From the NCBI GenBank assembly GCA_965112735.1, contig OZ218961.1, forward strand, positions 496,001-560,000: a stretch of DNA of 64,000 bases, given 5' to 3'. The notes beneath the pieces are model-generated. The model did not search any database. It worked only from the letters and a program-made list of their open reading frames with translations, and was not told where the DNA came from. The first letter of the stretch is position 1. Each line of letters opens with the position of its first letter. Of the stretch, positions 7,901-47,238 are shown piece by piece. This DNA is from Phaeosaccion multiseriatum (lineage: Eukaryota; Protista; Ochrophyta, other classes). The position numbers and the translations under genes were made by a program.

Positions 7901-8712
7901 CCCCCCCAACCCCACCTTCACCCCAATGCAGAGAGGCGACCTTCCGGAGAGGCACACTGCTCAACGCCATGTCCTCTGTGCGACCCTTCTCTTCCAAGGT
8001 CAAGCAGCCCAGACTCTTGGACAGCGAAGGTCTCATCCTCCCCGAGGGTCTTCCTCGAGACCACCGAGAGAGCCTCGAGCTGCCCAGAGGTATTCAGAGA
8101 GTGGACAGCGAGGGCCTGCTGCCCAGTGAGGTGGAAGCTGCAGCAGGAGGAGGAGGAGGAGGAGGAGGAGGAGGAGGAGGAGGAGGAGGAGGAGGAGGAG
8201 GAGGAGGAGGAGGAGGAGGAGGAGGAGGAGGAGGAGCGGGAGGAGGAGGAGGAGGAGTAGGAGGAGGAGGAGGTCGACGCTCTTCTGCGTCTTCGAGGGG
8301 AAGCCTACGTCCTCGCCCCTCCTCCCGGAGAGTTTCTGGCGACGACCCCGAGTCACAGGCCATGATGGCGTCAGCGAGAAGAAGTATCGCCGCTCCGATG
8401 GGAAGGCCGTTAGGGTCTCAGAGTTTAAGCGGCGCTGCCCTTAGGGGGGGGAGGGGAGGAGGAGGAGGAGGTCAAAGGGGACCCTATCTAGGAGGAGGAG
8501 GAGGAGGAGGAGGAGGAGGAGGAGACGGAGGAGGAGGAAGAGGAGGAGACGGAAGAGGAGGAGACGGAAGAGGAGGAGGAGAAGGAGATGGAAGAGGAGG
8601 GGTGAGGCGAGAGTCTCTTGGAGGGCGGACGGCGCCAAGTACTCCAGGGCATGCTCACCTCAATGAGAGGGAAGCTCGATTTTCTATCTCGAGGGCGGGT
8701 TCTATGCTGTGA
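1..8712 (+). CDS. 3' portion of a multi-exon SOS1/SLC9C-like Na+/H+ antiporter with cyclic-nucleotide-binding domains; 5' end lies upstream of the window
   Basis: GT-AG exons join into [42 protein letters not shown] and [16 protein letters not shown], which resemble the SOS1 cytosolic tail. CNBD-like segments: [58 protein letters not shown]. Gly-rich last exon 7933-8712 ends in TGA. Confidence 0.65.
2525..3000. repeat. Intronic (GGGT/GAGT)n tract followed by (CCAA)n tract
   Basis: Directly visible simple repeats inside intron ~2522-3017. Confidence 0.95.
4415..4963. repeat. Intronic (GTGAGG/GTGT)n tract and (CA)n microsatellite
   Basis: Directly visible; GTGAGG-type repeat ~4415-4640, (CA)n ~4845-4963. 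Confidence 0.95.
5794..6821 (+). repeat. Minisatellite, ~31 copies of a 35-bp unit (GGGCACACTAGAGCAGGTACAGTTTCAGGTTATTA) interspersed with a 25-bp deletion variant
   Basis: Counted 31 TTTCAGGTTATTA/TCTCAGGTTATTA cores; no spacers; first unit overlaps the exon end (DKGTLEQ|GTACAG). Confidence 0.95.
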
Positions 8713-8875
8713 GTGCGTGGGAGCGTGCGTGTGCGCGTGTGTGCGTGCGTGCGTGCTGGCGTACGCCTAGAACATGAGAGAGGTAATTTTTATACGCTGT
8801 AGCATATTTAAAAATTAATTATGATGCTTATTATTACGAACGATAAAAAAGGCAAGGTATACACAGCAGCGTATC

Positions 8876-8975
8876 GCCTGATAAGAGGTGCTCCTGATAA
8901 GAGGTGCTCCTGATAAGAGGTGCTCCTGATAACAGGTGCTCCTGATAAGAGGTGCTCCTGATAACAGGTGCTCCT
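8876..8975. repeat. 16-bp tandem repeat (CCTGATAAGAGGTGCT) x ~6
   Basis: Directly visible. Confidence 0.9.
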
Positions 8976-9057
8976 CCTCCCACTTCCCCGTGCCCACTTC
9001 TTCTGATCAAAGTACCGCCCCATCCCCCCCAAACACAAGAGCAAAGGTCACAGACAT

Positions 9058-9612
9058 ACCACCAGCTGCTCCATGTCCGCGCTCTCCTCGTAGCCGTGCA
9101 GCGCAGCCATGACCCTCGAGTCGCGAGCGTCGAACATGGCCAGCAGAGCCGCCCCGCCGCCGGAGAGGGCACAATGGCGTTCTTCACCAAGTCCGCCACG
9201 AGCGTCTGGAACAAGCTCTCCCGGCCCGCAGACGTCATGTCCACCCCTCGTGCTCTGCCTCCCTCCTCCCCTCCCTCCTCCTCCTCGCCCTCCTCTTCGT
9301 GCCCTGCTGATGCCGCTCCTCCCCCTCCCGAAAGCGGCACTCCCCGCGAGGAGGAGGAGGAGGCGGAGGAGGAGGCGGAGGAGGAGGCCTGCAGCTGCTC
9401 CAGCGTCACCCTGGCCAGCCGCCGGAGAGTGTCATTACAGTCGGTCTCGTCCTTCTCTAGACGGAACACCTTAAGAGCGGCGGCTATGGACGGATCCGAC
9501 CTCTGCACACACAGCTGCAGGGCAGTGCTCTCCAGATCGGAAAGATGCATGCTTGCCACCATCTCGCCGAAGCGCCGGTCCACAATGTGCGACAGCTCCT
9601 TGTCGTCGTAGC
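9058..9612 (-). pseudogene. Fragment of an unknown helical protein gene, copy 1 (frameshifted)
   Basis: Near-identical to 12089-12690 but with a 1-bp deletion (GAGCCGCCCCGCC vs GAGCCGCCCCCGCC) shifting the frame after SPAAG. Confidence 0.7.
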
Positions 9613-9770
9613 CGGGCCATAGGCCATAGGCACCGCAATCAACCTACTACTAATCTCCTCCACTCCTCCCCTCCTATCCCCTTTTCCTCTTGCCCCTCCC
9701 TCCCGCCGTCCTCCTCCTTCATATCATCAGTGTGTCCGCTTCGCCTTAAGAGTACTCCTCCTCCTTCTAC

Positions 9771-11621
9771 TCAATAATCCTCACTCTCACAACCTTCTTC
9801 GAAGAACTCCACTTGAAGGCCCTCGGGCAGCTGAGCAGGGAGCTTGTATCTGTATTCCTCAGAAACCTCGAGTTGCTCCAGACCTGCAGGCAGATGTGGG
9901 AGCCGCTGCTTGTACTCGAACCCCAGCTTCAGAGTCCGAAGAGAGGCAGGCAGGGTTAACGGGTGATGAAACTTCGAGCCATAGGGAAATTCCAGCTCCT
10001 TCAGCCCGTCCGGCAGATCTGATAGAGGCTGGCTATACTCCTTTCCCAGCTCCAGAGTCCGAAGAGAGGCAGGAAGGACCAACGGATCATTAAACTCCGA
10101 CTTATCGGAAAATGACAGCTCCTTCAGTCCGTCCGGCAGATCCGATAGGGGCTGGTTATAAACATTTCCCAGCTCCAGAGTTCGAAGAGAGGCAGGCAGG
10201 GCCAATGGATGATTAAACCTCGAGCCATAGGCAAATCTCAGCTCCTTCATCCCGTCTGGCAGATCCGATAGGGGCTGATTATACTCGTCTCCCAGCTGCA
10301 GAGTCCGAAGAGAGGCAGGCAGGGTTAACGGATGATTAAACCTCGAGCCATAGGAGGCAAATTTCAGCTCCTTCAGCCCGTCCGGTAGATCCGATAGGGG
10401 CTGGTTATAAATCTTTCCCAGCACCAGAGTCCGTAGAGAGGCAGGAAGGACTAAAGGATGATTAAACTTCGAGACACCGGAAAATCTCAGCTCCTTCATC
10501 CCGTCCGGCAGATCCAATAGGGGCACAATGTAATTCCACCCCAGCTCCAGCGTCCGAAGAGAGGCAGGCAGGGTTAACGGGTGATTAAACCTCGAGATAT
10601 AGGAGGCAAATTTCAGCTCCGTCAGCCCGTCCGGCAGATCCGATAGGGGCTGGTTATACACCTCTCCCAGCTCCAGCGTCCGAAGAGAGGCAGGAAGGAC
10701 CAAAGGATGATTAAACTTCGAGTCAGAGGCAAATCTCAGCTCCTCCATCCCGTCCGGCAGATCCGATAGGGGCACAATGTAATTCCACCCCAGCTCCAGT
10801 GTCCAAAGAGAGGCAGGAAGCTTCAATGGACGATTGAAGCAACACCAATCGTCGCCAAACTTCAGCTCTTCAAGAGAGCTGGGAAGAGTCACGTCATGGT
10901 TAAACCATCTCCCAAGCGTGATCTTCCGCAGCGATGGGGGGAGGTCCAAAGGATGATTGTAAATGGACCCAGGATCAAAGCTCAACTCTCTCAAGGCGTG
11001 CGGAAGTTTGACCTCTCCCGAAAACTCTCTCCCAAAATGTACACTCTCCAGCCCGTCAGGAAGACGCAGGCCACGACAGTTGAAATCATATCCCAAGCGA
11101 ACGTGCTTCACCGAGGGAGGGAGCACTCTCAGCCCTTCCTGGACAAGGGCAATGTCCGTCGCCCGAGTAGCACCAGATGAAATCCACCGTGCAAGGCCCA
11201 GCGTGACAGCGCTGACTGGAAAGTGTCTTTCGTCGGGAATCTCCCCTCCTCCCTCTCCACACTCCTGTGCCCGCTGCTGCTCCTCCTGGACGCATGGTCT
11301 TTGTCCATCCACAGCAGCAGAGGATTCTCCTCCTTCCCGAGATGGCTCAAGCTCAAGCCACTGCTGGAGCATCTTCAGCATTCTCTGCTGGACCGCTTTA
11401 GGCACTTCGCAGTGTAGAACAACTCGCCTCCCCACGACTGCATCCACCACTCTGGACAAACCCCACAGACTCTTGACGGAGCCCACGTTTGCAACAATGA
11501 GGGTCAGCACCTTCACTCCATCCCAGTCTGCTGCCTCGGTAACGGGTTCTCCTGAGTGCTTCTTTGAAGCACGCGAAGAGCGAATGTTTTTCGCTGCTGC
11601 TCGTGTCATTTCCCCCTCCAT
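9771..11621 (-). CDS. Intronless FNIP/LRR-like repeat protein, copy 1 (616 aa), F-box-like N-terminal segment
   Basis: Seven 41-42 aa units LPDGxxELxF...FNHPLxLPASLRTLxLGxxYNQPLSD match the FNIP-type LRR pattern (FNQPL..LP.SL..L.LG); N-terminal VLTLIVANVGSVKSLWGLSRV is F-box-like. Confidence 0.85.
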   Translation of the reverse strand: MEGEMTRAAAKNIRSSRASKKHSGEPVTEAADWDGVKVLTLIVANVGSVKSLWGLSRVVDAVVGRRVVLHCEVPKAVQQRMLKMLQQWLELEPSREGGESSAAVDGQRPCVQEEQQRAQECGEGGGEIPDERHFPVSAVTLGLARWISSGATRATDIALVQEGLRVLPPSVKHVRLGYDFNCRGLRLPDGLESVHFGREFSGEVKLPHALRELSFDPGSIYNHPLDLPPSLRKITLGRWFNHDVTLPSSLEELKFGDDWCCFNRPLKLPASLWTLELGWNYIVPLSDLPDGMEELRFASDSKFNHPLVLPASLRTLELGEVYNQPLSDLPDGLTELKFASYISRFNHPLTLPASLRTLELGWNYIVPLLDLPDGMKELRFSGVSKFNHPLVLPASLRTLVLGKIYNQPLSDLPDGLKELKFASYGSRFNHPLTLPASLRTLQLGDEYNQPLSDLPDGMKELRFAYGSRFNHPLALPASLRTLELGNVYNQPLSDLPDGLKELSFSDKSEFNDPLVLPASLRTLELGKEYSQPLSDLPDGLKELEFPYGSKFHHPLTLPASLRTLKLGFEYKQRLPHLPAGLEQLEVSEEYRYKLPAQLPEGLQVEFFEEGCESEDY

Positions 11622-12088
11622 CTCTTTCCCTTTTGCCTTCCGTCTCCCCCCCTCCCTGAAGTTTCTCTCCCTCTCCCCTCTTGAGCTCTCCGTCCTCCCC
11701 CCTCCTAGCTCTCGTTGTCTACACAGCTAAGGAGCTCGGGACTGCACAGACTCGCGTTGAGTTATTTTCAACGCGAAGTGGGCCCTTCTACGTCAATTAA
11801 CCCCGATAAGGCCCACCGCCTCCCCCATTGACATACTACATCGTCACACGCACCCACGCGATTCCCCACGCGCCTCTCTTACAATAAAAGGAGTCTTTGT
11901 ATTCTTAGCCAATTTATAAATAAAACCTTTCCTGCTATACAACAAAGGCGTGGGGGCTTTCCCTCTCCCTCGCCTTCTCCTCCTCCTCGTCCTCCTCCTC
12001 CGCCTCCTCCTCCTCCTCCTGCTGCTGCTATCCTGCACTACCTGCCAGTGGTGGTTAACAGTGCCCACCTCCCCTCTGCCCTCCAGAG

Positions 12089-12706
12089 CTACTGCTGCAC
12101 GGCCCCCAACACAGCGTGCAGGTCCACCACCAACTGCTCCATGTCCGCGCTCTCCTCGTAGCCGTGCAGCGCAGCCATGACCCTCGAGTCGCGAGCGTCA
12201 AACATGGCCAGCAGAGCCGCCCCCGCCGCCGGAGAGGCCACAATGGCGTTCTTCACCAAGTCCGCCACGAGCGTCTGGAACAAGCTCTCCCGGCCCGCAG
12301 ACGTCATGTCCACGCCTCGTGCTCTGCCTCCCTCCTCCCCTTCCTCCTCCTCCTCGCCCTCCTCTTCGTAGCCTGCTGATGCCGCTCCTCCCCCTCCCGA
12401 AAGCGGCACTCCCCGCGAGGAGGAGGAGGAGGAGGAGGAGGAGGAGGAGGAGGAGGAGGGGGACTGCAGCTGCTCCAGCGTCACCCTGGCCAGCCGCCGG
12501 AGAGTGTCCTTAAAGTCGGTCTCGTCCACCTCCAGACGGAACACCTCAAGAGCGGCGGCTATGGACGGATCCGACCTCTGCACACACAGCTGCAGGGCAG
12601 TGCCCTCCAGATCGGAAAGGCGCATGCTTGCCACCATCTCACCAAAGCGCCGGTCCACAGTGCAACAGCCTTTTGTCGTCGTAGCCGGGCCTTGCAGGCA
12701 CTGCAA
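12089..12706 (-). CDS. Fragment of an unknown helical protein gene, copy 2 (open ~205 aa, probably lacking its true 5' end)
   Basis: Open ORF ending VDLHAVLGAVQQ*; duplicated at 9058-9612 and 14797-14962. Confidence 0.45.
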   Translation of the reverse strand: MQCLQGPATTTKGCCTVDRRFGEMVASMRLSDLEGTALQLCVQRSDPSIAAALEVFRLEVDETDFKDTLRRLARVTLEQLQSPSSSSSSSSSSSSSSRGVPLSGGGGAASAGYEEEGEEEEEGEEGGRARGVDMTSAGRESLFQTLVADLVKNAIVASPAAGAALLAMFDARDSRVMAALHGYEESADMEQLVVDLHAVLGAVQQ

Positions 12707-12839
12707 TCAACCTGGGTACAACTCATCTCCTCAACTCGTCCCGTCATAACCCCTTTTACTCTTCCCCCTCCCTCCCGCCGTCCTCCTCCTTTATATCATC
12801 ACTGTGTCCGCTTCGCCTTAAGAGTAATCCTCCTCCTAC

Positions 12840-14297
12840 TCAATAATCATCACCCTCACAACCTTCTTTGAAGAACTCCACTTCAAGGCCCTCGGGCAGC
12901 TGAGCAGGGAGCTTGTATCTGTATTCCTCCCAAACCACGAGTCGCTCCAGACCTGCAGGCAGATCTGGGAGCGGCTGCTCGTACTCGCACCCCAGCTGCA
13001 GAGTCCGAACAGAGGCAGGCAGGGCCAATGGATGATTGAACAAAGAGTACTGGGCAAACTCCAGCTCCTTCATCCCGTCCGGCAGATCCGATAGGGGCTG
13101 ATTATACTCGTCTCCCAGCTGCAGAGTCCGAAGAGAGGCAGGCAGGGTTAACGGATGATTAAACTTCGACCACCTGAAAAATCTCAGCTCCTTCAGCCCG
13201 TCCGGCAGATCCGATAGGGGCTGACTATACCTCCCTCCCAGCTCCAGAGTCCGAAGAGTGGCACGCAGAATCAACGGATGATTAAACCTCGAGCACTCGG
13301 AAAACTTCAGCTCCTTCAGCCCGTCCGGCAGATCCGATAGGGGCTGATAATACTCGTCTCCCAGCTGCAGAGTCCGAAGAGAGGCAGGAAGGACCATCGG
13401 ATGATTAAATACCGAGCCAGAGGCAAATCTCAGCTCCTTCAGCCCGTCCGGCAGATCCGATAGGGGCTGGCTATACTCCTCTCCCAGCTCCAGGGTCCGA
13501 AGAGAGGCAGGAAGCTTCAATGGACGATTGAACCAACACCATACATAGCCGCCAAACTTCAGCTCTTCAAGAGAGCTGGGAAGAGTCACGTCATGCTTAA
13601 ACGAGCTCCCAAACGATGCCTTCCGCAGCGATGGGGGGAGGTCCAAAGGATGATTGTACATGGACTCAGGAGAGAAGCTCAACTCTCTCAAGGCGTGCGG
13701 AAGTTTGACCTCTTCCGAAAACTCTCTCCCAAAATGTACACTCTCCAGCTCGTCAGGAAGACGTAGGCCACGACAGCTGAAATCATCTCCCAAGCGAACG
13801 TGCTTCACCGAGGGAGGGAGCACTCTCAGCCCTTCCTGGACAAGGGCAATGTCCGCCGGTGTACACCGCGTATTGGCAACGCCCAGCGTGACAGCGCTGA
13901 CGCGAAAATGCCTTTCATTGGGAATGTCCCCTCCCCCCTCCCCACGCTGCTGGGCCCGCTGCTGCTCCTCCTGAACGCATGGTCTTTGTCCATCCTCAGC
14001 GGCAGAGGATGCTCCTCCTTCCCCAGATGGCTCAAGCTCAAGCCGTTGCTGGTGCTCAAGCATCTTCAGTATTCTCTGCTGGACCGCTTTAGGCACATGG
14101 CAGTGCAGAACAACTCGCCTACCCACGACTGCATCCACCACTCTGGACAAACCCCACACACTCTTGACGGAGCCGATATTTTGAAAAATACAGGTCAGCA
14201 CCTTCACTCCATCCCAGTCTGCTGCCTCGGTAACGGGTTCTCCTGAGGAGAGCTTCGAAGAGGGAATATTTTCCGCCCGTGTTCTTCCCCCGTCCAT
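12840..14297 (-). CDS. Intronless FNIP/LRR-like repeat protein, copy 2 (485 aa)
   Basis: Paralog of 9771-11621 with four LPDG units instead of seven; same N- and C-terminal caps (LPAQLPEGLxVEFFxEGCExxDY*). Confidence 0.85.
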   Translation of the reverse strand: MDGGRTRAENIPSSKLSSGEPVTEAADWDGVKVLTCIFQNIGSVKSVWGLSRVVDAVVGRRVVLHCHVPKAVQQRILKMLEHQQRLELEPSGEGGASSAAEDGQRPCVQEEQQRAQQRGEGGGDIPNERHFRVSAVTLGVANTRCTPADIALVQEGLRVLPPSVKHVRLGDDFSCRGLRLPDELESVHFGREFSEEVKLPHALRELSFSPESMYNHPLDLPPSLRKASFGSSFKHDVTLPSSLEELKFGGYVWCWFNRPLKLPASLRTLELGEEYSQPLSDLPDGLKELRFASGSVFNHPMVLPASLRTLQLGDEYYQPLSDLPDGLKELKFSECSRFNHPLILRATLRTLELGGRYSQPLSDLPDGLKELRFFRWSKFNHPLTLPASLRTLQLGDEYNQPLSDLPDGMKELEFAQYSLFNHPLALPASVRTLQLGCEYEQPLPDLPAGLERLVVWEEYRYKLPAQLPEGLEVEFFKEGCEGDDY

Positions 14298-14491
14298 CTC
14301 TTTCCCTTTTGCCTTCTCTCCCCCCTTTCTTGAAGCTTCTCTCCCCCTCCCCTCTTGAGCTCTCCGTCCTCCCCCCTAAGCTCTTGTTGTCTACACAGGT
14401 AAGGGGCTCGGGACTGCACAGACTCGCGTTATCGTGACTTCGCGGCGCGTAGACTTTAAACAAGACTTCAAAACAGAGAGAGAGAGAGATA

Positions 14492-14550
<59 letters not shown>

Positions 14551-14796
14551 GAAGGCCGATCGCGATTACATTGTAAGTGGCCCGCCTCCCCCATTGACAT
14601 ACTACATCGTCACACGCGCCCACGCGCCCACGCACCACCAATACCACCTGGGGGAGTCTTCGTATTCCTTCATCAATTCTCACATAAAAAACCTTTCCTG
14701 CTATACAACAAAGGCATGGGGCCTCTCCCTCTCTCTCGCCTCCTCCTCCTCCTCCTCCTCCTCCTCCTCCTCCTCCTCCTCCGCCTGCCCTCCAGA

Positions 14797-14962
14797 GCTA
14801 CTGCTGCACGGCCCCCAACACAGCGTGCAGGTCCACCACCAATTGTTCCCTGTCCGCGCTTTCCTTGTAGCCGTGCAGCGCAGCCATGACCCTCGAGTCG
14901 CGAGCGTCGAACATGGCCAGCAGAGCCGCCCCCGCCGCCGGAGAGGGCATGGTGGCGTTCTG
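14797..14962 (-). pseudogene. Third, truncated copy of the helical gene fragment
   Basis: Matches the 3' end of 12089-12260, then breaks off. Confidence 0.7.
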
Positions 14963-15100: not shown

Positions 15101-16005
15101 TCAGTCCTGGCAGTTGCAGGGGTGGCCCTTGGTGTGTACCCATCGCGTCGTCTCCTCAAAGGTGTCGCCACTGATTTCCCATTCGGCAGCTCGACCGCAC
15201 CGTTGTTCATACGCTCTTTCCCTGATGACGTGGGGACAAGCTCTCTCGTTCAAGTCCGACCGGAGCCATTTCAGCACGGCAGGGCTCATACCGTCCATGA
15301 TTGCCTCCTTACAGACCACCGCATCCCAACCACAGATGTGGCGAGCATTGGCATAGAGGAGCTGCAGTCCCTCGATGCGCCCCCCTCTAGATGCCATGCA
15401 AGCGCCAATACATGCCGTATTCGTCCCCTTCATGTTCTTCCAGCAAGACCCTCGTGTGAGGATGCTCAAGAAGCCATCTCACGATGATACACCCACTGTA
15501 GCAGGCGTGGCTCCACAACTCGGCACGATAGTCCACATCAGCGGCCTGCGATAGCAACCATTTGACCCCCCCCCAAGCGCCCGTCCTCTACAGCATGGGA
15601 AGCTATGATGAAGCCGTTATTGTGCCATGGGGCACTGGTGGTTGTGGGGTGGTTGTGGGGAATGTCCTCTGAGCGCAGTCACTTCAATACGCTGAGGCCA
15701 TGTGTTTTGTTCTTGGATGCTGCATCACTCATAAATACATCCCAGGGAAAATTCTTAACGTGGAGGGCCTTGAAGACCGAGGTCCTTGCATACCTCGACA
15801 TCTCTGTGTCAGGCAGCAGCGTCACAGAGCTCCTCACTTAGCTCGAGGCCCTGCTGGCCCAGTTCACGCACTCAATACAGAGCTGACGAGCCACAGATAA
15901 GTATGATGTCTCCACTGCTGGATAGAAAGCGGTGTAGCTGGCCTCCCACTCCTCATTCACACGAGCCACGAAGCACAAGTGTCCCTTTTCCCAAATGGAC
16001 GTGGC
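15101..16005 (-). pseudogene. Degenerate ankyrin-repeat gene of the same family as 33707-62417
   Basis: Retains HLGKG, LLYANARHICGWD, LKWLRSD, CPHVIRE, WVHTKGHPCNCQD* but is broken by frameshifts and stops. Confidence 0.85.
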
Positions 16006-16228: not shown

Positions 16229-17161
16229 ATGAGACCCCTTACCGAAGAGGAGACGAAGGTCCTCTTCGAGAAGCTGGCCAACTACATTGGCAAGAACATT
16301 GAGCAGCTCGTGGTGCGACCAGACGAGCCCTACTGCTTCCGTCTGCAGCGAGAGCGCGTCTTTTACGTGAGCGAGAAGATAATGCGGCAGGCGACCAACA
16401 TCAACAGAGACGACTTGCAATCACTGGGTACCTGCTTCGGGAAGTTCACCAAGTCCAGGAAGTTTAAGCTACACGTGACTTGCCTGGACTACATAGCCCA
16501 ATACGCCAAGGTGAGTGTGTGGGAGGGCAAAGGATAGTGAAGGTGGGGAGGCAGAGAGAGAGAGGGAGAGTTAAGCATACAAGGAGGGAGTATGGACGGC
16601 TCTTGCACTGGGCTTTGGGTGGACCGCCCGAGAGAAGGGCGTCTTCAAGGCTTTGGCTAGGGACACTTCTCCATGAGTAAGCGTCCTAAGGCTGGGTCAC
16701 AGGAGAGACGCAAGTGGATTGAGATACGTGCTGATACCGTGCCCGTCTCTCCCTCCCGCGCCCCTCGCTGTGTGCCCCCTCCGGAAATCCTTCCCATCCG
16801 TCTGTCCTTCCCACCCGCCTTCCCGTCCCTCCACTTTCCCCTTGATTCCTTTCTACACACACTGATTCCTTCTGCACCCCTCCAAAACAACCCCCTCCAG
16901 CACAAGGTGTGGCTCAAGCCGAACGCAGAAATGTCCTTCCTCTATGGTAACCACATTACCAAAGCCGGCCTCGGTCGCATGACTGACGCCACGCCGCAGT
17001 ACGCCGGTGTAGCCGTCTTTAGCATGAGTGACGTCCCCCTCGGCTTCGGAGTGGCTGCTCAGCCTACTGAGTATTGCAAGGACCTCGATCCGACGGCGGT
17101 GGTGGTGCTCCACCAGGCCGATGTGGGCGAGTACCTGCGGACGGAGGACGAGCTGACTTGA
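16229..17161 (+). CDS. NIP7: 60S ribosome subunit biogenesis protein NIP7 (exons 16229-16510, 16901-17161; 180 aa)
   Basis: [21 protein letters not shown]..., [39 protein letters not shown] are NIP7 signatures; GT-AG intron in phase 0. Confidence 0.95.
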
Positions 17162-33706: not shown

Positions 33707-34654
33707 TCAGTCCTGGCAGTTGCAGGGGTGTCCATTGGCGTGCACCCACTGCTTCATCTCCTCAAACCTTTCGGGTTCGATAACCCATTCCGCGCCCTGG
33801 CCACCATACTCTTCTTGATAAACACTGTCCCTGATGACCTGTGGGCACGACCTTTCGTCCCACTCGCACCGCACTTCCTCTGATCGGAGCCACTTCAGCA
33901 CAGCAAGGCTCTTACCCTGCACGACTGCATCCATGCAAACCTCCTCATTCCAGTCACAGAGGTGGCGAGCATTGGAGTGGAGGAACTGCAGTACCTCGAG
34001 GCGGCCACACCAAGCCGCATACGAAGGCCCATTGCGACAATTGCCGTCTTGATTCTCTTCCAGCAAGGCTCTCGAGGGAGGATGGTCGAGAAGCCATTCC
34101 ACGACGGGAACATGCCCACCTTCACATGCGCCGTGCCAGGATTCGGAGGAAAACTCTGCACGGGCCTCCTCCGACATGAGCCACTTGAGCATCTCCAAGT
34201 GTCCTGCCTTTGCAGCCCGGCCACACATATAGGAGCCGGTAGCGTACCATGGGCACTGCTCCTTGTCGGGAAGGTCCTCTGAGCGCAGCCACTTGAGTAC
34301 GCTCAGGCCATGCTCTCTGTTCTGCGCTGTTCCGTGACACACATTTCGATCCCAGGGACAGTCCTTGCCATGGAGGGCCTTGCATACCTCGACATCACCG
34401 TGCTCGGCAGCGGCCCTGAAGAGCTTGACACTCAGCTCGAGGCCCTGCCGACCTGTCGCCCAGTTCACGCACTCCAATGAGCTGACCACAGATGAGTAGG
34501 CTGTCTCCAATGCTGGATACAAAGTGGTGTAGTTTGTCTTCCACTCCTCACACACTTCAGCCACGAAGCAGAAGTGCCCCTTTCCAACGTGCTCCAAGAT
34601 AGCGCTGACCAGCTCGGGCTGTGCCAAGGCCTCGTGGCAAGCCTCAAATAGCAT
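33707..34654 (-). CDS. Intronless F-box-like/ankyrin-repeat protein ANK1 (315 aa, lacks the basic leader of its paralogs)
   Basis: ELVSAILEHVGKGHFCFVAEVCEEWK (F-box-like), repeated AA..GHLE.LKWL / CPW / CDW motifs typical of algal and giant-virus ankyrin proteins; ends GHPCNCQD*. Confidence 0.8.
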   Translation of the reverse strand: MLFEACHEALAQPELVSAILEHVGKGHFCFVAEVCEEWKTNYTTLYPALETAYSSVVSSLECVNWATGRQGLELSVKLFRAAAEHGDVEVCKALHGKDCPWDRNVCHGTAQNREHGLSVLKWLRSEDLPDKEQCPWYATGSYMCGRAAKAGHLEMLKWLMSEEARAEFSSESWHGACEGGHVPVVEWLLDHPPSRALLEENQDGNCRNGPSYAAWCGRLEVLQFLHSNARHLCDWNEEVCMDAVVQGKSLAVLKWLRSEEVRCEWDERSCPQVIRDSVYQEEYGGQGAEWVIEPERFEEMKQWVHANGHPCNCQD

Positions 34655-36433: not shown

Positions 36434-37507
36434 TCAGTCCTCGCAGTCGCAGGGGTGCCCATTGGCGTGCACCCACTTCTTGATGTCCTCAAAGGTTTTG
36501 GCGTCGATGTCCCATACCCCGCCCTCCCCTGCCCAATACACTCTGTCCCTGATGACTTGTGGGCACGACTGTTCGTCCCACGCACACTGCACGTCTTCCG
36601 ATCTGAGCCACTTGAGCACAGCAAGGTTCTTACCATACATGACTGCATACTTACAGACCCGAGCATCCCAATCACAAAGGTGGGGAGCATTGGCGTGGAG
36701 CAACTGCAGTACCTCGAGGCGGCCACGTAAAGCTGCATAACAAGCCCCATCGCGCCACTCGTCACAACCATTCCAGTCCAGCAAGGCTCTCGTGGGAGGA
36801 TGCTCGAGAAGCCATTCCACGACGGGAACATGTCCACCTTTACATGCGAGGTTCCAAGAGACGACATCAAAGTCTGCCCCACCGTCGTCCGACAGCAACC
36901 ACTTGAGCATATCTAAGCGCCCTTCAAGTGCAGCTCGGCAACACATACAGGAGCCGTCCCATGGGCACTGCTCCTTGTCGGGAAGGTCCTCTGAGCCCAG
37001 CCACTTGAGTACGCTCAGGCCATGCTCTCTGTTACGCACTGTTGCAGTACACACATACTCATCCCAGGGACAGTCCTTGCCGTGGAGGGCCTTGCATACC
37101 TCGACATCTCCGTGCTCGGCAGCGGCCTCGAAGAGCTCCTCAGTTAGCTCGAGGCCCTGCCGACTTGTCGCCCAGTTCAAGCACTCCACTGAGCTGACCA
37201 CAGACGAAAACGCTGTCTCCACTGCTGGATACAAAGCGGTGTAGCTGGCCTTCCACTCCTTGCTCACACCAGCCACGAAGCAGAGGTGCCCCTTTCCCAA
37301 GTGCGCCAAGATGGCACGAAGCAGCTCGAGATTTTCCAGGGCCTCGTGGCAAGCTTCAAAGAGCAGCCCATTCACTGAGGGCGTAGCACTGGCACCCCCA
37401 CATGCTGTTGTTGCCGGAGACCGTCTCAGCCTCCTTCCCTGTGCAGAGTCATGTGGCGCCTCCCCGTGCCCCAATGCCATTCTCCTCCGCTGCAGCCTCG
37501 TCTCCAT
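36434..37507 (-). CDS. Intronless F-box-like/ankyrin-repeat protein ANK2 (357 aa from METRLQRRR)
   Basis: Paralog; start chosen from the shared METRLQRRR leader; ends GHPCDCED*. Confidence 0.85.
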   Translation of the reverse strand: METRLQRRRMALGHGEAPHDSAQGRRLRRSPATTACGGASATPSVNGLLFEACHEALENLELLRAILAHLGKGHLCFVAGVSKEWKASYTALYPAVETAFSSVVSSVECLNWATSRQGLELTEELFEAAAEHGDVEVCKALHGKDCPWDEYVCTATVRNREHGLSVLKWLGSEDLPDKEQCPWDGSCMCCRAALEGRLDMLKWLLSDDGGADFDVVSWNLACKGGHVPVVEWLLEHPPTRALLDWNGCDEWRDGACYAALRGRLEVLQLLHANAPHLCDWDARVCKYAVMYGKNLAVLKWLRSEDVQCAWDEQSCPQVIRDRVYWAGEGGVWDIDAKTFEDIKKWVHANGHPCDCED

Positions 37508-37924
37508 TGTCTCGTCGATTTGGGTCTCGGGATAAATGCGAGTAAGTAAGCACCCTAGTAGGAGGAGAAGAAGGTGTTGAAGAAGGGGGGTGGAAGGAAA
37601 GGCGGAGCGGAGCAGCGAGACAGAGAGAGAGTGTGAGGGGCCGTGGAGGAGGGGCAGCAGCAGAGAGACCAGATGGCCAGCATGATTCACACATCTGTTG
37701 TAACTCCTCCCACTCCTCTTCCCCGCAGCTGCTTCCCCGCTTCCCCCGTCTTGCTCCCCCCTCAAGAACAAGGGGCGGGCTATCTCCGGTAGCAGGCACT
37801 TACCAGCGCCAGCAGAATCCTTTCTTTCTATCAGCCTCACCCCCTTCCTTATGCTTCCTACTTTATTCACGCGTGGGAGGTCTTGCGGCCCGTATGGAGC
37901 TCCGGATAGCCAGACCCACCATCT

Positions 37925-39368: not shown

Positions 39369-40448
39369 TCAGTCCTCGCAGTCACAGGGGTGCCCATTGG
39401 CGTGCACCCACTTCTTAATGTCCTCAAAGGTTTTGGCGTCGATATCCCATTCCTCCTCGTAATACTCTTCATACACTCCTCTGTCCCTAAGGATCTGTGG
39501 GCACGACTGTTCGTCCCACTCGCACTGCACTTCCTCCGATCTGAGCCACTTGAGCACAGTAAGGCTCTTACCCCTCAAGACTGCATACATACAGACCTCC
39601 TCATCCCAGTCACAGAGGTGGCGAGCATTGGCGTGGAGGAACCGCAGTACCTCGAGGCCGCCCCAGCCAGCTGCATAACAAGCCCCATAGCACCAAGAGC
39701 CGCTTTCATTCTCTTCCAGCAAGGCTCTCGTGGGAGGATGCTCGAGAAGCCATGCCACGACGGGGATGTGCCCGCCTATGCATGCACTGCTCCAAGAGCC
39801 GGAATCAAAGTCTACCCCACCGTCGTCCGACAGCAACCACTTGAGCATATCCAAGCGCCCTTCACGTGCAATAGCACACGTAGTGGAGCCGTCCTCGTAC
39901 AATGGGCACTGCTCCTTGTCGGGAAGGTCCTCTGAGCGCAGCCACTGCAGTACTCTCAGGCCATGCTTATTGTTAAACGCTGTTGCCTCACACACATTTT
40001 TATTCCAGGGACAGTCCTTGCCATGGAGGGCCTTGCATACCTCGACATCTCCGTGCCGGGCAGCGGCCCTGAAGAGCTTGACACTCAGCTCGAGGCCCTG
40101 CCGACTTGTCGCCCAGTTCACGCACTCCACTGAGTTGACCACAGACGAAAGCGCTGTCTCCACTGCTGGATACAAAGCGGTGTAGCTGGCCTTCCAATCC
40201 TTGCTCACACCAGCCACGAAGCAGAAGTGCCCCTTTCCCAAGCGCTCCAAGATGGCACGAAGCAGCTCGAGATTCTCCAGGGCCTCATGGCAAGCTTCAA
40301 AGAGCAGATCATTCACTAAGGGCGTAGCACTGGTACCCCCACATGCTGTAGTTGCTGGAGAGCGTCTCAGCCTCCTTCCCTGCGCAGAGTCATGTGGCGC
40401 CTCCCCGTGCCCCAATGCCGTTCTCCTCCGCTGCAGCCTCGTCTCCAT
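39369..40448 (-). CDS. Intronless F-box-like/ankyrin-repeat protein ANK3 (359 aa)
   Basis: Paralog with intact ORF METRLQRRR...GHPCDCED*. Confidence 0.85.
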   Translation of the reverse strand: METRLQRRRTALGHGEAPHDSAQGRRLRRSPATTACGGTSATPLVNDLLFEACHEALENLELLRAILERLGKGHFCFVAGVSKDWKASYTALYPAVETALSSVVNSVECVNWATSRQGLELSVKLFRAAARHGDVEVCKALHGKDCPWNKNVCEATAFNNKHGLRVLQWLRSEDLPDKEQCPLYEDGSTTCAIAREGRLDMLKWLLSDDGGVDFDSGSWSSACIGGHIPVVAWLLEHPPTRALLEENESGSWCYGACYAAGWGGLEVLRFLHANARHLCDWDEEVCMYAVLRGKSLTVLKWLRSEEVQCEWDEQSCPQILRDRGVYEEYYEEEWDIDAKTFEDIKKWVHANGHPCDCED

Positions 40449-41501: not shown

Positions 41502-42599
41502 TCAGTCCTGGCAGTCGCAGGGGTGCCCATTGGCGTGCACCCACTGCTTGATATCCTGAAAAGTTTTGGCGTCGATGTCCCATTCCTCCTCGTAATACTC
41601 TTCATACACTCCTCTGTCCCTGATGACCTGTGGGCACGACTCTTCGTCCCACTCGCACTGCACTTCTTCCGATCTGAGCCACTGGAGCATGGCAAGGTTC
41701 TCACCAGCCAAGACTGCATTCATACAGATCTCCGTATCCCATTTACAGAGGTGGCGAGCATTGGCGTGGAGCAACTGCAGTACCTCGAGATGGCCCCAGC
41801 GAGCTGCACACCAAGCCCCGTCGCGCCACTTGCCGTCTTCATTTTCTTCCAGCAAGGCTCTCGTGGGAGGATGCTCGAGAAGCCATTCCACGACGGGAAT
41901 ATGCCCACCGTCACATGCGTCGTTCCAAGAGGCGGCATCAAAGTCTACACCACCGTCGTCCGACAGCAACCACTTGAGCATATCTAAGCGCCCTTCACTT
42001 GCAGCGAAGGCACACATATAGGAGCCGTTACGGTCCCATGGGCACTGCTCCTTGTCGGGAAGGTCCTCTGAGCGGAGCCACTTGAGAACGCTCAGGCCAT
42101 GCTTGCTGTTCTTCGCGGCTGCCTGACACACATACTCATTCCAGGGACAGTCCTTGCCATGGAGGGCCTTGCATACCTCGACATCTCCGTACCGGGCAGC
42201 GGCCTCGAAGAGCCTGACACTTAGCTCGAGGCCCTGCTGACTTGTCGCCCAGTTCACACACTCCACTGAGCTGACCACAGACGAAAACGCTGTCTCCACT
42301 GCTGGATACAACGCGGTGTAGCTGGCCTTCCACTCCTTGCTCACACCAGCCACGAAGCAGAGGTGGCCCTTTCCCAAGTGGGCCAAGATGGCACGAAGCA
42401 GCTCGAGATTCTCCAGGGCCTCGTGGCAAGCTTCAAAGAGCAGCCCATTGTATCCGGAACTTGAAGCAGTGGTAACACTGGCACCCCCACATGCTGTTGT
42501 TGCTGGAGACCGTCTCAGCCTCCTTCCCTGCGCAGAGTCATGCGGCGTCTCCCCGTGCCCCAATGCCGTTCTCCTCCTCCGCTGCAGCCTCGTCTCCAT
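41502..42599 (-). CDS. Intronless F-box-like/ankyrin-repeat protein ANK4 (365 aa)
   Basis: Paralog with intact ORF METRLQRRRR...GHPCDCQD*. Confidence 0.85.
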   Translation of the reverse strand: METRLQRRRRTALGHGETPHDSAQGRRLRRSPATTACGGASVTTASSSGYNGLLFEACHEALENLELLRAILAHLGKGHLCFVAGVSKEWKASYTALYPAVETAFSSVVSSVECVNWATSQQGLELSVRLFEAAARYGDVEVCKALHGKDCPWNEYVCQAAAKNSKHGLSVLKWLRSEDLPDKEQCPWDRNGSYMCAFAASEGRLDMLKWLLSDDGGVDFDAASWNDACDGGHIPVVEWLLEHPPTRALLEENEDGKWRDGAWCAARWGHLEVLQLLHANARHLCKWDTEICMNAVLAGENLAMLQWLRSEEVQCEWDEESCPQVIRDRGVYEEYYEEEWDIDAKTFQDIKQWVHANGHPCDCQD

Positions 42600-43085
42600 T
42601 GTTTCGTCGAAATGGGCCTTGGGATAAAGGCGAGTAAGTAAGCACCCTAGTAGGCCCTGCTGGCCGGAGCAGATAAGTTGCTGAAGAGGGGGGGAGTGGA
42701 AGGAAAGGCGGAGCGGAGAGGAGAGAGAGAGTGAGCTGTGGAGGAAGGGCATCATCCACACATCTGTTGTAACTCCTCCCACTCCTCTTCCCCGCAGCTG
42801 CTTCCCCGCTTCCCCCGTCTTGCTCCCCCCTCAAGAACAGAGGGGCGGGCTATCTCCGGTAGCAGGCACTTACCAGCACCCCCTTCCTTTCCGTCAGGGT
42901 GGAGCCAGACCCGCCATCTGTGAGTCTGGATGTATAAAATGCCCACTCAGCCAGCCAAGATTCGACGGCCTGTCCATTGAACTTGCGGCGCTTCCCTGCC
43001 CACTCATGTGCGTCATCCATCGTCCTCGCCAAGAAGGGAAGAGGAAGGAATAAGTCAAGCGGGGTTCTATGTACGAAGTAGCTAA

Positions 43086-45326: not shown

Positions 45327-47238
45327 ATGAACGCCCCCACGATCCGAGTAAAGCCGGTGGCATCCTCTGTGATAAGCAGAGGGGCACCAGCAGGAGCTTA
45401 CGAGGCCCTACAGGGGAAGGAGCTGGTGCTAGTCATCGGAAGTGGCGGCAAGGCTTCCACGCCAGAAGTAGCAGCAGTCGGGGCCGCTTTGCAAGGCCTC
45501 CTGACGAATAGTGGCAGCAGCGGCGATTTTGTGCATGCTGTGGCAAAGACAGGAGAAGATGCGGCGCGCCGGCTTCTAGCGAGTGGAAAGACGTCTACTG
45601 TGGTCTTGCTCGTGGCCGGCATAGCAGGGGAAGATCTTGAAGGGCTCCTTGAGGCGGCGCAGCGGGCTCAGCATCAAGTGGTGATGGTGTACTGCAGCGA
45701 CGCAGGGTGAGTCGGGTCAAGGGGGGGAGATGTCCGCTTGTTATGTTCAGCCTCAAGGTTGTCCTTAACCGGCATTGCCAGCTCCGCTCTTTTGTGGCCT
45801 GCTTCTCTGCTCTTACTCCCCCTCTCTCTCTCACTTGCTCAATCCTTGCCCATTGCAGGGTCGTGTTTGAGGGACGAGACCTCAAGGGCGTGACGGAGGA
45901 GGAGGTGCAAGGGGCGAAGACGCCCTTCCAACAGAGCTTACAACCCATCGCACAAGCAGAGCGAGCAGTCTTGGCTAGCAACTCTGGTGAGGAGAGAGAT
46001 TAGGGGATGGAGGAGGACGAGGAGGAGGGAGGCGCGATGTCTTTTACCGACGCCTTTTATTGCCAGAGAGGAGAACAAGGGTCGTCTCTTTTTATCGTCA
46101 GAGATGGGCAGAGGTGCCTCCTTTGAGTCATGGATAGAGCTGGACCCCTACAATTGGGTAGTGTTTTGTGTTGGACAATGCAGAGGCGGAATCTGCGTGT
46201 GTGTCCTCTCTCGCTCTGGCGCACCTCTCCTCCTGACTCATGAACCCCACGCCTGCATGCGTGCCTCCATCCCGTTCAGACAAGGTCAAGACGTGTGCTG
46301 TCCGCCCTGCCGGCCTCTACGGCCCCACTCCAGCAGCGACAGTTGGTGATACAGCGGCAAACGGCAATGGGAAAGGGCAGCAAGGAATGCTGTATAGTTG
46401 GGTACGGGCAGGGGCCCAAGGAACCGTGCGCAGAGTCGGAGGCGGGGCCAACGTCGCGGACTTTACTTTTGCGGGCAACGCTGCCCACGCCATGCTCCTT
46501 GCAGCAGCTAGGCTCTCGGAAGGGGGCCATGGCGGGGGCGGGGATGGCAGTGGACGGGGTGGGGATGGCACTGGAGGGCGGGCCTTCTTTGTATCGGACG
46601 GTGAGCCCACACCCTTCTGGGACAAGGTGGGGCAAGTGCTAATGGGTGTGGGGTACTTCCCTGGAGGGGTGGGGACAACAACAACAACAGCAACAGCAAC
46701 AGCAACGAGCCTTCCAAGCCTACCGGTGTGGCTGGCGCTGCTCCTGTCATTCCTTCTACGGCTCCTGTCAGCCCTTTGCCCCCCCCTCTTCCGGCCGCCG
46801 TCTGTGTTCTTGAACGCAGAGGGCGTGACTCTGTCCACCGCGTATCGATACTTTAGCATTGCCCGCGCCACGGGCGTACTTGGCTACACCCCCCTGTGGA
46901 CAGGTGCAGAAGGGCTCGACATTACCCTGCAGACTATGACGAAGCGGAACGGGGAGGAGGGGGAGGGTCAGCAGTGGAGGAATCCCAAGGCTGTTGTGGA
47001 GTACGTGGGGCCATTCTCTCGGGAAGAGGTGTCTAAACACACGACTGAGGACGATGTGTGGATCATCGTAAACAATAGGGTCTTCGATGTGACGCCATTT
47101 GTTGAAATGCACCCGGGGGGGGAGGCCATTCTCCGCTATGCAGGAGGCGACTCCACGAAGGCAATGGATGGCCCGCAGCACCCGGCTCAGGCCAGGGAGA
47201 TCCTGGAGAGTCACTTTATAGGGGAACTGGCAGACTGA
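45327..47238 (+). CDS. NSDHL/ERG26-like 3-beta-hydroxysteroid dehydrogenase-fold protein fused to C-terminal cytochrome b5 (exons 45327-45706, 45859-45986, 46280-47238)
   Basis: YCSDAGVVFEGRDL, AERAVLASN, TCAVRPAGLYGP, DFTFAGNAAHAMLLAA, GRAFFVSDGEPTPFW, YFSIARATGVLGYTP; b5 domain FSREEVSKH..WIIVNNRVFDVTPFVEMHPGG..H..FIGEL; splice phases consistent. Confidence 0.85.

What the first reader, a model, noticed from the sequence alone, without database searches (positions are those of the whole stretch)
9771..14297. FNIP/LRR genes with shuffled modules and two hypervariable windows per repeat
Seen: each 41-42 aa unit has an almost invariant DNA scaffold and two variable windows. After ELxF: ASDSK, ASYISR, SGVSK, AYGSR, SDKSE, PYGSK, ASGSV, SECSR, FRWSK, AQYSL. 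After LxLG: WNYIV, EVYNQ, KIYNQ, DEYNQ, NVYNQ, KEYSQ, GRYSQ, CEYEQ. Unit number differs between paralogs (7 vs 4). Whole half-modules recur (LGWNYIVPL twice in copy 1; LQLGDEYNQPLSD in both genes). Established: these positions flank the LRR beta-strand binding face. Inference: combinatorial diversification by unequal crossover or conversion between repeats, analogous to variable LRR receptors in other lineages.
Basis: partly seen in the sequence, partly recalled or inferred. Interest (0 to 1): 0.8.

Follow-up and report, generated by a model that had tools for sequence, protein, structure and literature searches.

The report
Fast-evolving FNIP leucine-rich-repeat gene pair
Two tandemly duplicated genes of a brown-alga-like protist encode FNIP-type leucine-rich-repeat proteins whose repeats keep a constant framework but change quickly at the loop positions beside the binding face, a pattern already described for this protein family.

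Summary
Two intronless minus-strand ORFs (9771-11621, 616 aa; 12840-14297, 485 aa) are FNIP/FGxxFN leucine-rich-repeat proteins (Pfam PF05725, E 2.8e-73 and 3.6e-50). The predicted fold is closest to CroV588 (PDB 6NYR). Each has a 123-nt (41-42 aa) unit made of two half-repeats, with 7 versus 4 core units. Variation is concentrated just after each beta-strand. With synonymous branch lengths shared with the scaffold, omega is 3.6-4.5 in the windows and 0.44 in the scaffold. Simulated nulls give p = 0.007 and 0.024. Two mosaic tracts and a 249-nt higher-order repeat point to unit duplication and short conversion.

The DNA scaffold is about 90% identical between units, not invariant. Most window diversity consists of unique point variants rather than re-used modules. 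No donor cassettes occur in the 64 kb, so nothing suggests VLR-like programmed assembly.

Huyton et al. [quoted passage not shown] FNIP expansions in brown algae are also known. I file this as a new member of a known kind. It is most likely a cytosolic binding protein evolving under germline diversifying selection. Its ligand is unknown.

The parts
9771..11621 (-). FNIP gene 1, uninterrupted ORF of 616 aa
   Evidence: ORF list. Pfam PF05725 E 2.8e-73. AF2 LRR part has pLDDT above 90, and the top PDB match is 6NYR CroV588 at E 8e-19.
11124..11621 (-). Gene 1 N-terminal region (aa 1-166) with no detectable relatives and a low-confidence predicted structure
   Evidence: No Pfam hit at E<=10. No hits among 1.84 billion representatives. 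pLDDT mostly below 50.
10887..11123 (-). Gene 1, four irregular FNIP half-repeats (aa 167-245) forming the N-terminal part of the solenoid
   Evidence: Register. Compared with gene 2: dS 0.056, dN 0.088.
10761..10886 (-). Gene 1 leader unit u0. Its A-half scaffold is identical to gene 2 u0, and its W2 (WNYIV) is identical to gene 1 u2.
   Evidence: Mosaic tract over columns 31-41, p<=0.0005.
9894..10760 (-). Gene 1 core array of 7 units of 123/126 nt, with a 249-nt higher-order period. W1 windows at 10716-10730, 10590-10607, 10467-10481, 10341-10358, 10218-10232, 10095-10109, 9972-9986. W2 windows at 10650-10664, 10524-10538, 10401-10415, 10275-10289, 10152-10166, 10029-10043, 9906-9920.
9771..9893 (-). 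Gene 1 C-terminal cap (two degenerate half-repeats and an acidic tail) plus the stop codon
   Evidence: Compared with gene 2: 7.5 non-synonymous and 0.5 synonymous differences.
12840..14297 (-). FNIP gene 2, uninterrupted ORF of 485 aa
   Evidence: ORF list. Pfam PF05725 E 3.6e-50. 80-81% protein identity to gene 1.
12963..13583 (-). Gene 2 leader unit (13455-13583) and 4 core units (12963-13454). W1 windows at 13533-13553, 13410-13424, 13287-13301, 13164-13178, 13041-13055. W2 windows at 13467-13481, 13344-13358, 13221-13235, 13098-13112, 12975-12989.
9058..11758 (.). Copy 1 of the tandem segmental duplication (small downstream ORF, FNIP gene and about 140 bp upstream)
   Evidence: blastn 9058-10448 vs 12126-13514 at 88.9%, and 10258-11758 vs 12958-14430 at 85.9%. 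Sliding identity 0.86-1.0 outside the array.
12126..14430 (.). Copy 2 of the tandem segmental duplication
14582..14961 (.). Third, partial copy of the duplicated segment (intergenic part and 3' part of the small ORF only; no FNIP gene)
   Evidence: blastn 11816-12022 vs 14582-14788 at 83%, and 12065-12252 vs 14775-14961 at 93%.

Best explanation
These are two young tandem paralogs of the FNIP/FGxxFN class of leucine-rich-repeat proteins in the nuclear genome of an ochrophyte close to brown algae. Each protein has an orphan N-terminal region of about 160 aa followed by an LRR solenoid. It has no signal peptide or membrane segment, so it is probably cytosolic. The central array grew and shrank in the germline by unequal crossing-over or slippage in the 123-nt and 249-nt registers, with occasional short conversion between units and between paralogs. 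On that framework, the residues leaving each concave-face beta-strand (repeat position 5 and the stretch between the F/L-G and F/Y-N motifs) have been replaced faster than synonymous sites. This points to diversifying selection for new binding specificities.

Shown: family membership, fold, register, unit-number difference, excess non-synonymous change in the windows, and two mosaic tracts. Inferred: that the variable edge binds a ligand, and that the ligand is a fast-changing partner such as a viral or pathogen protein or a polymorphic self protein. The ligand and the downstream action are unknown.
For: Family and fold: Pfam, phmmer to CroV588 at E 2.6e-57, and Foldseek to 6NYR and many giant-virus FNIP proteins.

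Window position: the windows start 1-2 residues after each predicted strand. [quoted passage not shown]

Rates:
- NG86 gives scaffold dS 0.26 and dN 0.04, W1 dN 0.72, and W2 variable sites dN 0.96.
- ML with shared synonymous branch lengths gives omega 4.5 for the windows (2dlnL 109) and 0.44 for the scaffold. It stays at 3.6-4.3 with an alternative indel placement or with the indel columns removed.
- Observed pN(window)/pS(scaffold) is 1.91. The null with omega=1 in the windows gives p=0.007. The all-neutral null with windows picked post hoc gives p=0.024.
- In nearest-neighbour unit pairs, 49/156 window nucleotides differ against 29/465 scaffold nucleotides (Fisher p=3e-14).

Array dynamics: 7 vs 4 units; the 249-nt period scores better than the 123-nt period in gene 1; weak positional clustering, with bootstraps of 16-59; PHI p=0.0008 for 13 units; two significant shared tracts.

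Gene-level context: segmental duplication at 86-89% identity. Paralog differences in the irregular repeats and cap are mostly non-synonymous (22.5 vs 3.5).
Against: Only 13 units from two genes of one genome were available. No other paralogs, strains or orthologs could be found. The windows were defined after looking at the sequence, and under the harshest post hoc null p is only 0.024. Recombination among units breaks the single-tree assumption and inflates omega when dS is fixed from the scaffold. Conversion that homogenises the scaffold would lower scaffold dS and mimic omega>1. PHI is not significant for the 11 core units alone (p=0.12). Expression is not shown, and no FNIP protein has a known ligand. 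Low GC3 (0.58-0.60 vs 0.66-0.83 in neighbouring genes) fits weak expression.
Confidence: 0.7

Rival explanations
1. The pattern reflects relaxed constraint only. The window residues are solvent-exposed loop positions that drift neutrally while the structural scaffold is under purifying selection. Concerted evolution keeps scaffold synonymous divergence artificially low, and no selection for novelty is involved.
For: Positions 8-9 are variable in every FNIP protein regardless of biology (PMC9525666). The sample is small, and the post hoc null gives only p=0.024. Mosaic tracts show that conversion occurs. Within-window synonymous differences are also high (W2 pS 0.55).
Against: Window dN exceeds scaffold dS about 3-4-fold, with 2dlnL 65-109 against omega=1. 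The null with omega=1 in the windows is rejected at p=0.007. Conversion tracts long enough to homogenise a 123-nt unit would also erase 15-nt windows unless selection kept them different. The unit pair g1_u4/g2_u3 differs at 2 of 108 positions outside W1 (2 of 93 scaffold, 0 of 15 in W2) but at 8 of 15 positions in W1.
Confidence: 0.2
2. The array is diversified by a programmed mechanism, either somatic or targeted to the germline. Candidates are cassette-based assembly as in lamprey VLRs, or targeted mutagenesis of the windows. Somatic recombination has been speculated for Ectocarpus ROCO-LRR genes.
For: Differences are sharply confined to short windows in otherwise near-identical units. A W2 block is copied between units. 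Zambounis et al. raised somatic recombination for brown-algal LRR genes (PMC3341825).
Against: Both genes are complete ORFs. No orphan unit or half-unit cassettes occur anywhere else in the 64 kb. The whole-window Rfam scan gave no match, and Pfam was run only on the larger ORFs; neither turned up a candidate mutator enzyme or template repeat. Re-use of windows is rare (2 cases). The pattern is explained by ordinary duplication plus selection.
Confidence: 0.03
3. The genes are of giant-virus origin, captured from an NCLDV. Their fast evolution reflects a former or continuing role on the viral side, for example binding host factors, rather than a host recognition function.
For: FNIP proteins are a hallmark of mimivirus-like viruses, and the closest structures are viral. 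The literature treats brown-algal FNIP genes as possibly virus-derived (PMC4421812; PMC2373305; bioRxiv 10.64898/2026.04.27.720984). The genes lack introns in a genome that has introns, and their GC3 is lower than that of neighbouring genes.
Against: The flanking genes are ordinary host genes with introns, such as NIP7, an AAA ATPase, thioredoxin and cytochrome b5. No viral core genes were seen among the ORFs examined. Overall GC matches the surroundings. No viral contig carries a relative of this subfamily. The named sequence hits are dictyostelids, Tribonema and Ascophyllum, not viruses.
Confidence: 0.15
4. The locus is an assembly artefact or a pair of dead genes, with repeat copy number or order wrong in the assembly.
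For: Tandem 123-nt repeats at 80-86% identity are prone to mis-assembly from short reads. The co-duplicated small ORF is frameshifted in one copy.
Against: ORFs of 616 and 485 codons stay open across the arrays. Scaffold codons show purifying selection (omega about 0.1-0.4). The units are different enough (14-20%) to be placed uniquely.
Confidence: 0.04

Closest known systems
FNIP/FGxxFN leucine-rich-repeat proteins of Cafeteria roenbergensis virus (CroV588, PDB 6NYR; CroV539, PDB 7ZAL), mimiviruses and Dictyostelium (Pfam PF05725; Huyton et al. 2022, PMC9525666)
   Same: Same repeat class by sequence (E 2.6e-57 to CroV588) and by predicted fold. The units are near-identical within a protein. 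[quoted passage not shown] Many paralogs occur per genome.
   Different: The repeats alternate between two half-types. The B-half is LxxLxLGxxYxQPLSD, with F replaced by L and Y and a poorly conserved ladder Asn. The A-half has G replaced by A/S and 2-3 extra residues in the variable loop (F-xxxxx(x)-FNHPL). The half-repeats are 20-22 aa. The N-terminal region is an orphan with no detectable F-box. The host is a stramenopile nuclear genome.
FNIP gene expansions in brown algae (121 proteins in Saccharina japonica, also Ectocarpus; Ye et al. 2015, PMC4421812)
   Same: Same domain family in a closely related lineage, where it forms a large multi-copy family.
   Different: The best database identity is only 28-40%, so this subfamily and its N-terminal region are not represented. 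Among the papers read here, none reported site-wise selection or unit-level analysis for the brown-algal FNIP genes.
Ectocarpus ROCO-LRR and NB-ARC-TPR candidate immune receptors (Zambounis et al. 2012, PMC3341825; PMC11378527)
   Same: The repeat domain varies in unit number. Unit phylogeny is scrambled relative to position. Positive selection acts on residues of the concave face. Gene families turn over by birth and death in a brown-algal lineage.
   Different: There, each repeat is a separate exon and shuffling is exon shuffling. Here the array is one uninterrupted ORF. There is no ROC-COR, NB-ARC or kinase signalling domain, and the LRR class is different.
[quoted passage not shown]
   Same: An LRR solenoid in which diversity is concentrated on and beside the concave beta-sheet, with a variable number of LRR modules.
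   Different: VLR genes are assembled somatically from flanking cassettes into an incomplete germline gene. Here the genes are complete, no cassettes were found, and the variation seen is between germline paralogs and repeat units.
F-box plus FNIP proteins of giant viruses and dictyostelids, and fast-evolving F-box adaptor families generally
   Same: A variable repeat domain follows a short N-terminal module. Many structural neighbours are annotated as F-box and FNIP proteins.
   Different: No F-box is detected here by Pfam even at E<=10, and the N-terminal region has no homologs at all.

Membership tests
FNIP / FGxxFN LRR family (Pfam PF05725) | Match to the FNIP profile above the curated cut-off | tested here: met
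   242.3 and 168.3 bits against a cut-off of 21.
FNIP / FGxxFN LRR family (Pfam PF05725) | Tandem repeats of about 22 residues with the LxxLxFGxxFNQ(P)(I/L) consensus | tested here: met
   The B-halves read LxxLxLGxxYxQPL. The A-halves read LxxLxF(A/S)xxx(x)xFNHPL, a variant with a longer loop. They align residue by residue to CroV588 repeats.
FNIP / FGxxFN LRR family (Pfam PF05725) | LRR solenoid fold like CroV588/CroV539 | tested here: met
   In the AF2 model, pLDDT is above 90 over most of residues 170-600. Foldseek to 6NYR gives E 8e-19 and to 7ZAL E 3e-8. This is a prediction, not a solved structure.
FNIP / FGxxFN LRR family (Pfam PF05725) | Highest variability at positions 8-9 (and 5) of the repeat | tested here: met
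   Per-column omega is above 1 at columns 8, 10, 11, 13, 14, 16, 22, 34, 35 and 37. For the family-wide statement see PMC9525666.
VLR-like somatically assembled LRR receptors | Incomplete germline gene flanked by donor LRR cassettes | tested here: not met
   Both ORFs are complete. All matches to scaffold DNA and peptide motifs lie inside the two genes, across the 64 kb.
VLR-like somatically assembled LRR receptors | Array sequence differs among cells of one individual or clone | not testable with these tools
   This needs long-read amplicon or single-cell data.
Ectocarpus-type exon-shuffled LRR receptors (ROCO, NB-ARC-TPR) | One repeat per exon | tested here: not met
   Each array lies in a single uninterrupted ORF.
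Ectocarpus-type exon-shuffled LRR receptors (ROCO, NB-ARC-TPR) | ROC-COR GTPase, NB-ARC or kinase signalling domain | tested here: not met
   FNIP is the only Pfam family above the curated cut-off in either protein.
F-box/LRR ubiquitin-ligase adaptors (including viral F-box-FNIP proteins) | N-terminal F-box domain | tested here: not met
   No Pfam family at E<=10 in residues 1-166 or 1-159. No homologs by phmmer in 1.84 billion proteins. A very divergent F-box cannot be excluded, because the AF2 confidence there is low.

The most novel reading that the evidence does not exclude
This FNIP subfamily could be part of a cytosolic LRR-only recognition repertoire in the brown-algal lineage. In this reading it is a sensor or adaptor set whose loop windows are kept diverse by an arms race with viruses or other pathogens, with array length and window content reshuffled by intra- and inter-gene conversion. 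Functionally it would parallel plant NLR LRR domains, but it is built on the FGxxFN fold and lacks a known signalling domain. A stronger version, in which the windows are diversified by a targeted or somatic mechanism, is not excluded but has no positive evidence.
Probability: 0.15. Interest if true: 0.6.

Novelty: new member of a known kind. Interest (0 to 1): 0.3.

Why it matters
FNIP proteins are among the largest gene families in brown algae, dictyostelids and giant viruses, yet no ligand or function is known for them. A locus where the repeat framework is nearly constant and the changes are confined to mapped loop positions gives a clean natural set of specificity variants. The window residues could be swapped between units to test what these proteins bind. 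For evolutionary biology it adds a small, quantified case of diversifying selection on the FGxxFN fold in a stramenopile, but it does not reveal a new mechanism.

Tried and rejected
1. Closer relatives, other paralogs and other strains. None was found, so cross-strain variation and a genome-wide unit tree could not be done.
   - The word-indexed search of 5.8 billion proteins gave only generic FNIP hits at 28-40% identity.
   - phmmer of the N-terminal region against 1.84 billion representatives gave nothing.
   - Two metagenome scans, one protein-derived and one with a degenerate scaffold DNA pattern, gave nothing.
   - The viral contig scan gave nothing.
   - Exact-protein look-ups of both genes gave nothing.
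2. F-box hypothesis for the N-terminus. It was rejected at Pfam sensitivity.
3. Synteny of the co-duplicated small ORF. Its only relative, in Discosporangium, has no FNIP neighbour.
4. IQ-TREE codon fits per partition. They gave omega 2.26 for the windows and 0.46 for the scaffold, but with free branch lengths and too few codons to test. I replaced this with a shared-dS likelihood fit and with simulations.
5. Rfam scan of the window. It found nothing.
6. Model coordinates. They were not available to scripts, so solvent exposure of the window residues could not be computed. Their position rests on the DSSP strand positions, the alignment to CroV588 and the published structures.
Full report
**What is there.** The window is nuclear DNA of a eukaryote. 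It has about 57% GC, introns and many microsatellites.
- A NIP7 exon at 16.9-17.2 kb is most similar to brown-algal and related ochrophyte sequences, at 84% to Discosporangium mesarthrocarpum.
- The only relative of a neighbouring small ORF is also from Discosporangium.
- The source is therefore a stramenopile close to brown algae. Its proteins are not in the searched collections.

On the minus strand lie two uninterrupted ORFs: 9771-11621 (616 aa) and 12840-14297 (485 aa). Both match Pfam FNIP (PF05725) at E 2.8e-73 and 3.6e-50. They lie in a tandem segmental duplication, 9058-11758 versus 12126-14430, at 86-89% identity. The duplication also carries a small downstream ORF. A third, partial copy lies at 14582-14961.

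**Checking the observation.** TRF reports a 123-nt period over 9922-10817 (7.2 copies) and 12991-13533 (4.4 copies). In gene 1 a 249-nt period scores better, with 86% against 80% matches. Each protein has four parts:
- an N-terminal region of about 160 aa;
- four irregular half-repeats;
- a leader unit followed by 7 (gene 1) or 4 (gene 2) core units of 41-42 aa;
- a two-half-repeat cap with an acidic tail.

Each unit is an A-half, LPDG(L/M)xELxF + W1 (5-6 aa) + FNHPLx, followed by a B-half, LPASLRTLxLG + W2 (xxYxQ) + PLSD. Two scaffold DNA motifs occur 13 and 11 times, all inside the two genes, against none expected. So are the repeated LGWNYIVPL in gene 1 and LQLGDEYNQPLSD in both genes. One correction is needed: the scaffold is almost invariant as protein, but as DNA the units differ by about 9-12% (scaffold dS 0.2-0.26).

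**Is the window variability more than chance or drift?**
- Pooled Nei-Gojobori estimates over the 11 core units give a strict-scaffold dS of 0.26 and dN of 0.04. W1 dN is 0.72, and the three variable W2 codons give dN 0.96.
- I fitted a codon likelihood in which branch lengths and kappa come from the scaffold and only omega is free. It gives omega 0.44 for the scaffold and 4.5 for the windows (2dlnL 109 against omega=1), with 7.3 for W1 and 2.7 for W2.
- Moving the indel in W1 or dropping the indel-prone columns leaves omega at 3.6-4.3.
- Per column, omega is above 1 with 2dlnL above 6.4 at columns 8, 10, 11, 13, 14, 16, 22, 34, 35 and 37. Ser15, Tyr36 and Gln38 inside the windows are fixed.
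- The windows were chosen by eye, so I simulated two nulls on the fitted tree. The observed pN(window)/pS(scaffold) is 1.91. The null with omega=1 in the windows has mean 0.88 and gives p=0.007. An all-neutral null with the best 7+5 codon windows picked post hoc has mean 1.25 and gives p=0.024.
- In nearest-neighbour unit pairs, 49 of 156 window nucleotides differ against 29 of 465 scaffold nucleotides (Fisher p=3e-14).
- Between the paralogs, the non-array LRR parts also differ mostly by replacements. Those replacements mostly fall at the equivalent loop positions: 15 non-synonymous versus 3 synonymous in the irregular repeats, and 7.5 versus 0.5 in the cap.

The excess of replacement change is therefore real. 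It rests on 13 units from one genome. A single tree is assumed although the units recombine.

**Shuffling.**
- A nucleotide tree of the units resolves only the leaders and the terminal units. Internal bootstraps are 16-59.
- The A-half and B-half distance matrices disagree. For example, g1_u7 and g2_u4 are closest in the B-half but not in the A-half.
- 59% of informative site pairs are incompatible. PHI gives p=0.0008 for all 13 units, 0.036 for the core-unit scaffold alone and 0.12 for the 11 core units.
- A run-length test finds two tracts at the permutation floor (p<=0.0005, under the Bonferroni threshold of 0.00064). The first is g1_u0/g1_u2 over columns 31-41: the WNYIV block with its linked GGG and TAC synonymous variants, in a unit whose A-half scaffold is identical to the leader of gene 2. 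The second is g1_u4/g2_u3 over columns 16-42.
- Together with the 3-unit length difference and the 249-nt higher-order period, this supports unit duplication and short-tract conversion over evolutionary time.
- Re-use is rare. All 13 W1 sequences and 11 of 13 W2 sequences are distinct, so most diversity is substitution rather than recombination of a fixed module set.

**Structure and position of the windows.** AlphaFold2 with a 50-sequence alignment gives pLDDT above 90 for most of residues 170-600 and below 50 for residues 1-130. Foldseek puts CroV588 (6NYR) first at E 8e-19 and CroV539 (7ZAL) fourth. In the viral library the top hits are giant-virus FNIP proteins, many of them annotated as F-box plus FNIP. 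The predicted strands are the xLxF and xLxL tetrapeptides, and each window begins one or two residues after a strand. phmmer aligns LG-EV-YNQPL to FG-RN-FNQQI of CroV588, so W2 residues 1-2 are positions 8-9 of the FGxxFN repeat. Compared with the consensus, the A-half has A/S in place of G and two or three extra residues in that loop. The B-half has lost strict conservation of the ladder asparagine (column 37).

**What is already known.**
- Huyton et al. 2022 (PMC9525666) solved CroV588 and CroV539. [quoted passage not shown] Position 5 is the only variable residue on the concave face of CroV588. The CroV588 repeats are almost identical otherwise. The authors suggest the family may recognise many ligands and say it is 'not quite as diverse' as VLRs.
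- Ye et al. 2015 counted 121 FNIP proteins in Saccharina japonica and noted them in Ectocarpus.
- A 2026 preprint lists FNIP among the largest brown-algal orthogroups and calls the domain putatively virus-derived.
- Zambounis et al. 2012 showed scrambled repeat phylogenies and positive selection on the concave face of Ectocarpus ROCO-LRR exons. They did not treat FNIP genes.
This report adds the alternating half-repeat variant, the quantified omega, the mosaic tracts and the orphan N-terminus.

**Mechanism.**
- I commit to ordinary germline evolution. Tandem gene duplication came first. The array then expanded and contracted by unequal crossing-over in the 123/249-nt register, with occasional short conversion. 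Diversifying selection acted on the loop residues at the concave edge.
- The proteins lack a signal peptide or membrane segment (read from the sequence) and any signalling domain. They most likely act as cytosolic binding or adaptor proteins.
- An F-box, common in viral and dictyostelid relatives, is not detectable.
- What they bind is unknown. A fast-changing partner such as a viral protein is an inference from the selection pattern only.

**Rivals.**
- Pure drift plus concerted evolution remains possible at about 0.2.
- A programmed, VLR-like process has no support. The ORFs are complete, there are no cassettes in 64 kb, and few windows are re-used.
- A viral origin of the family is plausible from the literature, the lack of introns and the lower GC3. 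However, the locus sits among ordinary host genes, and no viral contig carries this subfamily.

**Verdict.** I file the locus as a new member of a known kind. Interest is modest: it is a tidy example of a known property of FNIP repeats, limited by having a single genome and no functional data.

Noticed in passing
33707-34654(-), 36434-37870(-), 39369-40448(-), 41502-42782(-), 60840-62417(+); fragment 15101-15998(-): A second intronless repeat-protein family is present: at least five ankyrin-repeat paralogs plus a C-terminal fragment lying directly upstream of FNIP gene 2. They share an N-terminal METRLQRRR... region and a C-terminal WVHANGHPC(N/D)C(Q/E)D tail, and are 72-82% identical at the DNA level. 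No F-box was detected by Pfam.
   Followed up: partly
8834-9643(-), 12089-12706(-), 14582-14961: A small ORF of unknown function is co-duplicated downstream of each FNIP gene. Copy 1 is frameshifted after ...SPAAG relative to copy 2, and a third copy is partial. Its only database relative is an unnamed Discosporangium mesarthrocarpum protein (30% identity, E 3.6e-8), which has no FNIP gene beside it.
   Followed up: partly
59488-60045(+) and 63345-63977(+): Two near-identical ORFs carry a Spondin_N domain (E 7e-6 each), which indicates another recent local duplication.
   Followed up: no
9771-11621 and 12840-14297 compared with 16229-17158, 46660-47235, 49300-49800, 59527-60045: The FNIP genes have GC3 of 0.58-0.60, against 0.66-0.83 in neighbouring conserved genes. 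The ankyrin paralogs are intermediate at 0.66-0.67. This fits weak codon bias from low expression, or a younger or foreign origin.
   Followed up: partly
9774-10886(-): The repeats give significant sequence matches to the LRR domains of bacterial type III effectors (SspH2 E 3e-13, SlrP, YopM, SspH1, IpaH). This is short-repeat LRR class similarity only, and no E3-ligase (NEL) domain is present.
   Followed up: no
16229-16537(+) and 16895-17158(+): A NIP7 ribosome-biogenesis gene, split by at least one intron, lies about 1.9 kb from FNIP gene 2. It was used to place the organism near brown algae (84% to Discosporangium).
   Followed up: yes
8145-8273, 8490-8600, 11973-12020, 12417-12463, 14475-14547, 14739-14786: Dense trinucleotide and dinucleotide microsatellites ((AGG)n, (GAG)n, (CCT)n, (AG)n) flank and separate the duplicated segments. 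They could have promoted the tandem duplication.
   Followed up: no
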